The notes beneath the pieces are model-generated. The model saw nothing but the letters and a program-made list of their open reading frames with translations. It did not search any database and had not been told where the DNA came from. A program made the position numbers and the translations under genes. A stretch of 64,000 bases of DNA from Octopus sinensis (taxonomy: Eukaryota), in assembly GCF_006345805.1 (NCBI RefSeq), contig NC_043009.1:52638001-52702000 (forward strand), written 5' to 3'. Every line of letters begins with the position of its first letter. The first letter of the stretch is position 1. Positions 3,290-3,708 of this stretch are shown here, piece after piece.

Positions 3290-3343
<54 letters not shown>

Positions 3344-3708
3344 TGTTTCTTTATTAGCCACACAGGGCTGCACACAGATAGAACAAATTACAAGGTAGAG
3401 CTTTTCTTTTGAAGGTTTAAAAAAAAAAAAAAAGGAAGGGGGAGTTTCGATCAAAATGGATCGTAAAAGGAGAGAAAGAGGACAAAAAAAGGGGGGGTTA
3501 AAAAAGGGGGAGTGGAAAAAAAAATGATCAATAGGGATCGTTATCACAGAAATGTCAATATGAAGTGTAAAGAGGAGGACAGGTGAGGTTTACCCGTGGA
3601 AAGAAAAGCCTACGGAAAAGACCACGGTAACCTCGGTCAATGGAGTCACATGTTATATTTCTTTCTTTTTTTTGCGAATAAGCAACTCTCTGTTTTCAAT
3701 TTCTGGGT

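What the first reader, a model, noticed from the sequence alone, without database searches (positions are those of the whole stretch)
3341..3400. The LINE 3' terminus matches the type 2 tail of SINE family B: a Tx1 LINE-SINE partner pair
Seen: the LINE end TTTGTTCTATCTGTGTGCAGCCCTGTGTGGCTAATAAAGAAA aligns without gaps to the SINE tail TTTGTCCCCTCTGTGTTTAGCCCCTTGTGGGCAATAAAGAAA (copies ending at 23849, 24032, 24243, 60759, 60943). By hand count 33 of 42 positions match the composite tail, with a further CCTTG match just upstream. Both can end in ...GAAA(TA)CATA. Established: stringent SINEs share the 3' end of the LINE that mobilises them. Inference: this SINE subfamily uses this Tx1 family or a sibling; tail-sharing partners of L1/Tx1-group elements are unusual. 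The SINE copies are not in GATA arrays, so the true partner may be a sister family with a different target.
Basis: partly seen in the sequence, partly recalled or inferred. Interest (0 to 1): 0.85.

Follow-up and report, generated by a model that had tools for sequence, protein, structure and literature searches.

The report
Octopod SINE tail copied from LINE
The last ~40 bases of a dead, Tx1-like LINE in this octopod DNA are truly related to the tail of a local SINE, and a sister LINE from another sample matches that tail almost exactly, so this is an ordinary SINE-borrows-LINE-tail partnership in a LINE group where such pairs are rarely documented.

Summary
The LINE 3' end (window 3387-3346, minus strand) matches the SINE-B type-2 tail at 30-33 of 42 positions without gaps. 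The best unrelated 42-mer among about 128,000 positions in the window scores 23.

The LINE (3344-7929, minus) is a frameshifted APE+RT element flanked on both sides by (GATA)n. Its nearest named relative is Xenopus Tx1, so I call it Tx1-like; strict clade membership is not proven.

The main new result is that this copy is not the best partner. A sister LINE (locus L001, 62% amino-acid identity) ends in a sequence that matches the SINE tail at 32 of 35 positions. Two of the three differences are a compensatory G-C to C-G swap in a 4-bp stem.

Other sister LINEs end ...GGCCAATAAAAGAAATC(ATT)n. In Argonauta hians, a LINE 3' end and SINE-B homologues in one 12-kb locus share a tail nearly base for base.

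Among the LINEs, only the last ~40 nt of the 3' UTR is conserved. It can fold as a GC stem plus an A-rich/U-rich lower stem.

Most likely, SINE-B subfamilies are mobilised in trans by Tx1-like LINE lineages that recognise this terminal hairpin. Mobilisation itself is inferred, not shown. This is a new member of a known kind and of moderate interest.

The parts
3344..7929 (-). Full-length but dead Tx1-like LINE, about 4.6 kb. The 5' region is A/C-rich, ORF2 has APE and RT domains, and the 3' UTR is 363 nt.
   Evidence: Only one copy is in the window. Pfam finds Exo_endo_phos and RVT_1 in the ORF pieces. tblastn with the L001 proteins maps 48-63% identity across at least 8 frame changes.
3709..7119 (-). 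ORF2 (APE endonuclease, RT, C-terminal Cys/His motif), broken by several frameshifts and stops.
3346..3387 (-). The 42-nt LINE 3' tail that is homologous to the SINE-B type-2 tail. With one 3-nt gap the homology extends to about 3395.
   Evidence: Covariance model R1 scores it 46.2 bits, but it was one of the seed sequences.
3346..3378 (-). Predicted terminal hairpin UCUGUGUGCAGCCCUGUGUGGCUAAUAAAGAAA. The upper stem pairs AGCC (3369-3366) with GGCU (3359-3356). The lower stem pairs UCU.UGU with AUA.AGA.
   Evidence: RNAfold gives -6.9 kcal/mol, z = -1.4. The same architecture is predicted in 5 of 6 LINE/SINE tails.
3204..3343 (.). (GATA)n array, 35 units, directly 3' of the LINE. It reads (CTAT)n on the LINE strand.
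7930..8041 (.). (GATA)n array, 28 units, directly 5' of the LINE in the same orientation. The LINE therefore sits inside one microsatellite.
23610..23850 (+). SINE-B, full length, with type-2 tail. It is the left half of a dimer.
23851..24032 (+). SINE-B starting at position 58, with type-2 tail. It is the right half of the dimer.
24243..24472 (-). SINE-B, full length, with type-2 tail. It is 97.3% identical to 23851-24032.
60942..61173 (-). SINE-B, full length, with type-2 tail. It is the left half of a second dimer.
60759..60941 (-). SINE-B starting at position 58, with type-2 tail. It is the right half of the second dimer.
50047..50093 (+). Tail-only fragment ...CGCCCTGGTGGCAAATAAAAGAAATCACT embedded in an (ATT)n/(ATC)n array. 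It looks like an extremely 5'-truncated insertion of the (ATT)n-associated sister lineage.
   Evidence: R1 scores it 36.9 bits, but it was a seed sequence.

Best explanation
The window is octopod DNA. It holds a dead copy of a Tx1-like (L1-superfamily) LINE lying inside a (GATA)n microsatellite.

All sampled members of this cephalopod LINE clade end in the same ~35-40-nt module:
- a short GC-rich stem (4 bp) with a CUUGU-type loop;
- the A-rich string AAUAAAGAAA, which can pair back to a U-rich stretch upstream;
- a few lineage-specific bases (CATAT, TCTAT, TC) that run into the target repeat.

The last ~60 nt of the SINE-B 'type 2' subfamily were copied from a LINE of this clade. The donor was not the GATA-associated family seen in the window. 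It was a sister lineage like L001, whose tail is nearly identical to the SINE's.

Proposed mechanism (inferred, by analogy with stringent LINE/SINE pairs such as UnaL2/UnaSINE1): the ORF2 protein of that sister LINE binds the terminal hairpin on its own RNA. It also binds the same hairpin on the SINE transcript in trans, nicks the target, and starts reverse transcription from the A-rich end.

What is shown: the homology, its terminal position, its selective conservation among LINE 3' UTRs, stem complementarity kept through double changes, the LINE's domains and flanks, and a replicate of the LINE/SINE tail match in Argonauta.

What is inferred: protein-RNA recognition, trans-mobilisation, the identity of the active driver in this genome, and target specificity (there is one flanked copy per lineage).
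For: Homology with the window LINE is real.

The sister LINE L001 has APE, RT and zf-RVT domains and is 62% identical to the window LINE's APE piece. It ends ...CCTCTATGTTTAGGCCCTTGTGGCCAATAAAGAAA, which matches the SINE consensus at 32 of 35 positions. The local score is 55 against 16.3 +/- 2.9 for shuffles, with 0 of 2000 reaching it. Two of the three differences turn stem GGCC/GGCC into GCCC/GGGC.

L006, whose RT is 85% identical to L001's, ends GGGCCCTTGTGGCCAATAAAAGAAATC(ATT)n. Its similarity to the SINE tail extends about 60 nt.

The Argonauta hians locus L007 replicates the pattern. The LINE 3' UTR ends CAGCCAGGTGGCTAAGAAAGAAA. An adjacent 5'-truncated LINE copy ends TCGGCCCTTGTGGCTAATAAAGAAATCTAT. 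SINE-B homologues in the same 12 kb (blastn E = 7e-16) share that tail over 35-75 aligned columns, including the final TCTAT.

Among four LINE 3' UTRs, the last 40 alignment columns are 56-78% identical. The rest is 24-42% identical, except 60% for the close pair L001/L006.

For the hairpin, 83.6% of cells pair, against 39-49% when partners are slid by 1-3 columns. The covariation score is 0.205 against 0.139, with 0 of 500 shuffles reaching it. One stem pair occurs as GC (11) and CG (4); the outer stem pair occurs as AU, GU and GC. The same fold is the minimum-energy structure in 5 of 6 tails.

On clade: the RT scores 257 bits (37% identity) against Xenopus Tx1 ORF2, versus 145 bits against human L1 ORF2p and 83 bits against R2. 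Octopus repeat annotations list L1-Tx1 families and mostly unclassified SINEs (PMC13282606, PMC8967140).
Against: - No LINE with the exact type-2 tail is in the window. L001 comes from an unidentified ENA assembly (ERZ25513664), so co-residence with this SINE is not shown.
- The five SINE type-2 copies are not in GATA or ATT arrays, so a shared target cannot be used as evidence.
- The covariation rests on few independent events. The four SINE rows share one change, and only 3 of 11 pairs have changes on both sides, which 232 of 500 shuffles also reach.
- The folds are weak (-6.5 to -10.2 kcal/mol, z = -0.2 to -2.2). L006 forms only the upper stem.
- AATAAA could instead be conserved as a polyadenylation signal.
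- Activity periods could not be compared.
- ARAGORN and Rfam do not recognise a tRNA in the SINE head, so its promoter type is unverified.
Confidence: 0.7

Rival explanations
1. The GATA-associated LINE family seen in the window is itself the driver of the type-2 SINE subfamily. The 9-12 differences in 42 nt are decay of this old copy.
For: Both elements lie in the same genome and window, and the match is terminal and significant. The LINE copy is clearly degraded.
Against: The window tail's distinctive features are stem AGCC/GGCT, a 6-nt loop and TCTGTGT upstream. These are shared with the Argonauta LINE tails, not with the SINE, so they are lineage features rather than random decay. L001 fits the SINE much better, at 29-32 of 35 against 24-27 of 35. 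None of the five SINE copies lies in a GATA array.
Confidence: 0.1
2. The match is fossil homology only. The SINE tail was once copied from a LINE of this clade, but the SINE copies seen here were spread by another machinery, or the module is conserved for another reason such as 3' end processing through AATAAA.
For: Mobilisation is untested. AATAAA is the canonical polyadenylation signal. The hairpin thermodynamics are weak. Octopus genomes have very active RTE, CR1 and Dong-R4 LINEs (PMC13282606).
Against: The SINE keeps the stem through a double change. The tail is conserved in SINE-B homologues of Argonauta along with the local LINE's tail, down to the terminal TCTAT. That is expected if tails are kept matched to a living partner. 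No other sequence in the window resembles the tail.
Confidence: 0.13
3. The last 40-55 nt of the window 'LINE' are not part of it. They are a separate, extremely 5'-truncated SINE or LINE-tail insertion that landed next to it in the GATA array.
For: Tail-only fragments do exist (50047-50093). Apart from the tail, the window 3' UTR has almost no similarity to the sister UTRs.
Against: Every sister LINE carries the module contiguous with its own 3' UTR. The similarity to the Argonauta LINE 3' UTR runs 55 nt into the window UTR. The tail is of the LINE type, not the SINE type.
Confidence: 0.04
4. The similarity is chance resemblance of two A/T-rich, low-complexity ends.
For: The final 10 nt are A-rich. 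The gapped score is reached by 6 of 2000 shuffles.
Against: The window-wide scan gives 31 against a maximum of 23. blastn gives E = 2.9e-4. The terminal position is the same in both elements. Independent LINEs in other loci match even better.
Confidence: 0.01

Closest known systems
UnaL2 / UnaSINE1 of the eel (L2 clade; Kajikawa and Okada 2002, cited in PMC4494074 and PMC3747384)
   Same: The SINE and LINE share a ~50-60-nt 3' tail with a short conserved stem-loop. The LINE's RT is thought to recognise it in cis and in trans (the 'stringent' type).
   Different: The LINE clade differs (L2 versus Tx1-like). UnaL2 ends in (TGTAA)n repeats. That pair is proven by retrotransposition assays, whereas nothing here is tested experimentally.
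Monocot L1 lineage 1a (LINE1-1_ZM) with ZmSINE2/ZmSINE3, and Chlamydomonas L1-1_CR with SINEX-3_CR (Ohshima 2012/2013; PMC3472496, PMC3747384)
   Same: These are L1-superfamily LINEs whose last ~45 nt are far more conserved than the rest of the element. The tail forms a stem-loop with compensatory changes and is shared with SINEs. Such pairs are a rare exception in a group that mostly uses relaxed poly(A) recognition.
   Different: Those cases are in plants and algae, in the L1 clade proper, and end in poly(A). Here the host is an animal (cephalopod), the clade is Tx1-like, there is no poly(A), and the ends abut microsatellites.
Tx1-Mar LINEs and SINEU of crocodilians (Kojima 2015, PMC4494074)
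   Same: A Tx1-clade, target-specific LINE is proposed to mobilise SINEs in trans.
   Different: There the argument rests on a shared insertion target (Mariner-N4_AMi) and shared snRNA-derived 5' heads, and SINEU ends in poly(A). Here the argument rests on a shared unique 3' tail, and the SINE copies do not share the LINE copy's target.
Kibi and Koshi, microsatellite-specific Tx1-clade LINEs of teleosts (Kojima and Fujiwara 2004, as summarised in PMC4494074)
   Same: These are Tx1-type elements found inside a specific microsatellite.
   Different: Their targets are (TC)n and (TTC)n. Here the flanks are (GATA)n, and (ATT)n for the sister lineage, each seen in one or two copies only. The accounts I read mention no SINE partner for Kibi or Koshi.

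Membership tests
Stringent-type LINE/SINE partner pair (shared 3' tail) | The SINE 3' end is homologous to the 3' end of a LINE, and both end at the same terminal position. | tested here: met
   Window LINE: 30-33 of 42. Sister LINE L001: 32 of 35, z = 13.5. Argonauta LINE and SINE tails in L007.
Stringent-type LINE/SINE partner pair (shared 3' tail) | The tail is conserved within the LINE lineage beyond the rest of the 3' UTR. | tested here: met
   The last 40 columns are 56-78% identical. The rest is 24-42% identical, or 60% for the close pair L001/L006.
Stringent-type LINE/SINE partner pair (shared 3' tail) | A conserved stem-loop in the tail is supported by compensatory changes. | tested here: inconclusive
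   83.6% of cells pair, against 39-49% in slid controls, and the covariation score exceeds all 500 shuffles. However, few events are independent and the counts of pairs with double changes are not above shuffles. Fold z-scores are -0.2 to -2.2.
Stringent-type LINE/SINE partner pair (shared 3' tail) | The LINE and SINE are present in the same genome with overlapping activity. | tested here: inconclusive
   The window LINE and the SINE share a genome, but that LINE is the poorer match and is dead. The best match, L001, is from an unidentified sample. SINE copies differ pairwise by JC 0.03-0.14. LINE age could not be estimated from one copy.
Stringent-type LINE/SINE partner pair (shared 3' tail) | The LINE and SINE share the same insertion signature or target. 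| tested here: not met
   The window LINE lies in (GATA)n, but none of the five type-2 SINE copies does. This counts against this LINE family as the driver, not against a sister lineage.
Stringent-type LINE/SINE partner pair (shared 3' tail) | The LINE's proteins mobilise the SINE in trans, dependent on the tail. | not testable with these tools
   This requires a retrotransposition assay.
Tx1 clade of non-LTR retrotransposons (L1 superfamily) | ORF2 has an N-terminal APE endonuclease, an RT, and a C-terminal Cys/His (zf-RVT) motif. | tested here: met
   Pfam finds Exo_endo_phos and RVT_1 in the window pieces. RVT_1 and zf-RVT are on record for sister ORFs. A CPRCGQSDETVLHALVQC-type motif is visible in the window translation.
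Tx1 clade of non-LTR retrotransposons (L1 superfamily) | The RT domain groups with Tx1 reference elements in a phylogeny of LINE clades. | tested here: inconclusive
   The RT scores 257 bits (37% identity) to Xenopus Tx1, against 145 bits to human L1 ORF2p. In an ML tree rooted on human L1, the cephalopod clade (100/100) sits among Tx1-like sequences but outside the Xenopus/turtle/medaka cluster. No RTE, R1, CR1 or other clades were available as controls.
Tx1 clade of non-LTR retrotransposons (L1 superfamily) | Insertion is target-specific. | tested here: inconclusive
   One copy is flanked on both sides by (GATA)n. Sister L006 abuts (ATT)n, and a tail fragment lies inside (ATT)n. Numbers are too small to call specificity.
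tRNA-derived SINE | The 5' head is derived from a tRNA, with internal A and B boxes. | tested here: not met
   ARAGORN finds no tRNA in the window. Rfam finds nothing at gathering score or at E<=1 on a full copy. Only box-like strings (TGGCAGAA; GAGTTCAAATTCC) are visible by eye. The element is called a SINE here because of its size (~230 nt), copy number (14 blastn hits in 64 kb), lack of coding capacity and LINE-derived tail.

The most novel reading that the evidence does not exclude
The SINE-B superfamily belongs to the large, mostly unclassified SINE fraction of octopus genomes. It may be driven by microsatellite-associated Tx1-like LINEs through a conserved terminal hairpin, with SINE subfamilies swapping tails as LINE lineages turn over. 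That would be the first stringent, tail-sharing LINE/SINE system documented in the animal Tx1 group. It would also name the autonomous partner behind a share of the octopod SINE expansion.
Probability: 0.45. Interest if true: 0.6.

Novelty: new member of a known kind. Interest (0 to 1): 0.45.

Why it matters
SINEs make up about 12% of the Octopus vulgaris genome, and nearly all recently active SINE families there are 'unclassified' with no assigned driver (PMC13282606). Tying one abundant SINE family to Tx1-like LINEs would show which autonomous elements power part of that expansion.

It would also add an animal example to the very short list of L1-superfamily LINEs that use stringent recognition of their 3' end: 3 SINEs among more than 800 L1-clade LINEs in PMC3747384. 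This bears on whether stringent recognition is ancestral in that superfamily.

The compact 33-nt hairpin, with natural compensatory variants, offers a ready set of mutants for a recognition assay.

Tried and rejected
- Two pattern scans of JGI metagenome contigs for the tail gave nothing useful. The single hit, L011, is a chance match inside a microbial coding sequence.
- The listing of cluster members on ten RT representatives returned no names, so unlabelled neighbours could not be assigned to clades.
- The PDB search with the APE protein found nothing.
- A look-up of P0012 failed.
- The L004 and L005 contigs stop before the LINE tail.
- L002, L003 and L008 carry more distant or different ends and were not used. 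L008 ends ...TTGTGGCCAATCAACACACA, without the AATAAAGAAA string.
- Covariance model R1 recovered only its own seed sequences and no further tails. The other SINE-B tail type is too different for it.
- The 'AGGCCTTGTGCC' string in the L009/L010 3' region resembles the other SINE-B tail. It lies about 200 nt inside the unit, so I did not count it as a LINE terminus.
- I considered the tail being a nested SINE fragment, and chance similarity, and rejected both (see the rival explanations).
- ARAGORN and Rfam gave no support for a tRNA origin of the SINE head.

Full report
**What is at the coordinates**

On the minus strand the window reads ...CCTTGTAATTTGTTCTATCTGTGTGCAGCCCTGTGTGGCTAATAAAGAAA|CATAT(CTAT)n. 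The last A of GAAA is at position 3346. This is the 3' end of a 4.6-kb element occupying 3344-7929. It is flanked by (GATA)n arrays on both sides, in the same orientation: 3204-3343 (35 units) and 7930-8041 (28 units).

The ORF pieces carry Exo_endo_phos and RVT_1 domains. The reading frame is broken many times. tblastn with an intact relative maps the protein across at least eight frame changes at 48-63% identity. It is the only copy in the window. It is therefore a dead, full-length non-LTR retrotransposon sitting inside a GATA microsatellite.

**The SINE**

blastn with one copy finds 14 SINE-B hits in the 64 kb, plus a weak 28-nt head match and the LINE tail. The others share the head and body but carry a different tail...CAGGCCTTGTGCCTATAGTAGAAAGG, often followed by ATT, CTT or ATC microsatellites. 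Type-2 copies differ pairwise by JC 0.03-0.14. ARAGORN and Rfam do not recognise a tRNA in the head.

**Checking the observation**

Real copies give 30-33/42 and the majority consensus gives 31/42. Four tests show this is not chance:
- blastn of a whole SINE against the window returns the LINE end as the only non-SINE hit (E = 2.9e-4).
- An 18-mer with up to 3 mismatches hits 6 times, against 0.08 expected.
- In a scan of every 42-mer on both strands, the LINE end scores 31. The best unrelated site scores 23, and the background is 10.8 +/- 2.8.
- The gapped local score is 30, against 17.2 +/- 2.9 for dinucleotide shuffles, with 6 of 2000 shuffles reaching it.

The match is terminal in both elements. 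One caveat: the two SINE copies ending GAAATACATA are a 97.3%-identical inverted pair 210 bp apart, so that shared ending is one observation, not two.

**Relatives from elsewhere**

A 218-aa APE piece of the window LINE finds a 62%-identical protein on a 3.9-kb ENA contig, L001. That contig carries a nearly intact element with APE, RT and zf-RVT domains. Its 3' end is ...CCGTCCTCTATGTTTAGGCCCTTGTGGCCAATAAAGAAA|CGATTATTAC.

Against the SINE type-2 consensus this is 32 of 35 positions (29-32 against individual copies). The window LINE reaches only 24-27 of 35. The local score is 55, against 16.3 +/- 2.9 for shuffles (z = 13.5, 0 of 2000 reaching it). Two of the three differences convert the stem GGCC...GGCC into GCCC...GGGC, which is a compensatory change.

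Searching with L001's RT gave further relatives:
- Argonauta hians at 70% identity, and Acanthosepion, which places the window among cephalopods, most likely octopods.
- L006, whose RT is 85% identical to L001's. Its LINE ends ...GGGCCCTTGTGGCCAATAAAAGAAATC(ATT)n, and its similarity to the SINE tail runs about 60 nt.

The Argonauta locus L007 acts as a within-locus replicate:
- The LINE ends ...CAGCCAGGTGGCTAAGAAAGAAA.
- A 5'-truncated LINE copy next to it ends ...TCGGCCCTTGTGGCTAATAAAGAAATCTAT.
- Several SINE-B homologues in the same 12 kb (blastn E = 7e-16) end in the same tail over 35-75 aligned columns, down to the final TCTAT.

LINE and SINE tails are therefore kept matched in a second octopod lineage.

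**The tail as a functional module**

I aligned four LINE 3' UTRs. The last 40 columns are 56-78% identical. The remainder is 24-42% identical, or 60% for the close pair L001/L006. This is the same pattern Ohshima used to argue for stringent recognition in a monocot L1 lineage (PMC3747384).

RNAfold gives one architecture for 5 of 6 tails. It has a 4-bp GC stem with a CUUGU-type loop. Below that is a lower stem in which AAUAAAGA pairs with UCUAUGUU-like sequence upstream, leaving AA unpaired. Energies are modest (-6.5 to -10.2 kcal/mol) and z-scores are -0.2 to -2.2, so thermodynamics alone prove nothing.

On a 16-row alignment, 83.6% of cells pair, against 39-49% when partners are slid. The covariation score of 0.205 exceeds all 500 shuffles (mean 0.139). 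One stem pair occurs as GC (11) and CG (4), and the outer stem pair occurs as AU, GU and GC. Independent events are few, and the number of pairs with double changes is not above shuffles. I therefore rate the hairpin as likely but not proven.

The other SINE-B tail also keeps a 4-bp stem, with different sequences (AGGC/GCCU, UGCC/GGCA, CUGG/CCAG), in most copies. This is by inspection.

**Clade**

L001's RT scores 257 bits (37% identity over 457 aa) against Xenopus Tx1 ORF2 (P0212 = YTX2_XENLA, retrieved). It scores 145 bits against human L1 ORF2p and 83 bits against R2.

In an ML tree rooted on human L1, the cephalopod sequences form a 100/100 clade among Tx1-like sequences. They lie outside the Xenopus/turtle/medaka cluster. 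No other LINE clades were available as controls, so 'Tx1-like, L1 superfamily' is what the data support. Octopus repeat annotations use the label L1-Tx1 for such elements (PMC13282606, PMC8967140).

**Mechanism**

The best-supported reading is as follows. SINE-B subfamilies took their last ~60 nt from LINEs of this clade. They are mobilised in trans by whichever lineage recognises their version of the hairpin. The window's GATA-associated LINE is a relative of the true driver of the type-2 subfamily, not the driver itself.

Three observations fit the lineage-specific bases after GAAA (CATAT, TCTAT, TC) meeting the target repeat: the GATA flanks here, the (ATT)n end of L006, and a 38-nt tail-only fragment inside an (ATT)n array at 50047-50093. 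With one or two copies per lineage, target specificity remains an inference. Protein-RNA recognition and trans-mobilisation are inferred by analogy with UnaL2/UnaSINE1 and other stringent pairs.

**Comparison with what is known, and novelty**

SINEs sharing LINE tails is textbook. Within the L1 superfamily it is rare: 3 SINEs among more than 800 L1-clade LINEs, all in plants or algae (PMC3747384). For Tx1, the one proposed SINE partnership I found (SINEU with Tx1-Mar) rests on a shared target and shared 5' heads, and SINEU ends in poly(A) (PMC4494074).

Five full-text searches found no report of a Tx1-type tail-sharing pair, nor of a LINE partner for octopus SINEs. Repbase reports could not be searched. 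I therefore class this as a new member of a known kind, of moderate interest. The interest lies mainly in naming a plausible driver for part of the octopod SINE expansion and in providing natural compensatory variants for testing.

**Limits**

- There is a single LINE copy in the window.
- The best-matching LINE comes from an unidentified sample.
- No age comparison was possible.
- The small tree has no other LINE clades.
- The covariation rests on few events.

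Noticed in passing
window 50047-50093 (+), inside the ATT/ATC array at about 49900-50220: A 38-nt tail-only fragment (...CGCCCTGGTGGCAAATAAAAGAAATCACT) has ATT repeats on both sides. It resembles the end of sister LINE L006, ...GGCCAATAAAAGAAATC(ATT)n. It looks like an extremely 5'-truncated insertion into an (ATT)n target.
   Followed up: partly
window 52150-53130 (-), 19165-19400 (+), 17960-18200 (+): SINE-B copies with the other tail (...CAGGCCTTGTGCCTATAGTAGAAAGG) are chained head to tail through ATT, CTT, AGT and ATC microsatellites. 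Some have ATT repeats on both sides. This suggests microsatellite-directed insertion or tail-seeded repeat growth.
   Followed up: partly
window 23610-24032 (+) and 61173-60759 (-): Two loci with unrelated flanks carry the same 'dimer': a full SINE-B joined at ...AAAGAAATA|GGTATTTCGTCT... to a second copy starting at position 58. This is either a dimeric SINE unit or a recurrent template jump at one position.
   Followed up: partly
window 23851-24032 (+) and 24243-24472 (-): Two SINE-B copies are 97.3% identical, inverted, 210 bp apart, and both end GAAATACATA. All other pairs are 87-91% identical. This is probably a local inverted duplication.
   Followed up: partly
window 8060-8133 (+): Right beside the LINE's 5' flank array, the plus strand reads GAGGTAGGATAAAGAAATAAT(CTAT)n. 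This is a tail-like A-rich end followed by the same repeat in the opposite orientation. It may be a second, almost fully truncated insertion.
   Followed up: no
Its own 3' part, ...GGTGCTCCAGCATGGCCGCAGTC..TGAAACAA, is seen at 13375-13397 and 9522-9500. It contains a GGGGTCGAT..TCGACT motif resembling the SINE-B body.
   Followed up: no
window 1-2700: This stretch is extremely dense in TG, GTAT, GA and CA microsatellites. It also holds short tandem copies of a ~120-nt unit (about 1650-1980).
   Followed up: no
protein P0012: A protein 69% identical to the C-terminal half of the cephalopod LINE ORF2 is deposited as 'MAG: zinc-binding domain-containing protein [Herbaspirillum sp.]'. This is probably host (cephalopod) contamination of a bacterial bin.
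   Followed up: no
L009/L010 (ENA ERZ21867824 contig ctg122906l): A more distant member of the LINE clade (45% identity) is repeated head to tail every 6596 bp, with an intact 1153-aa ORF2 in both units. Tandem arrays of this kind are typical of target-specific LINEs.
   Followed up: no
window 7360-7934 (-): The LINE's 5' region is A/C-rich and low in complexity. It is open in one frame from the first base for about 190 codons without an ATG, followed by a 90-aa ORF. No Pfam domain was found, so the nature of ORF1 is unresolved.
   Followed up: no
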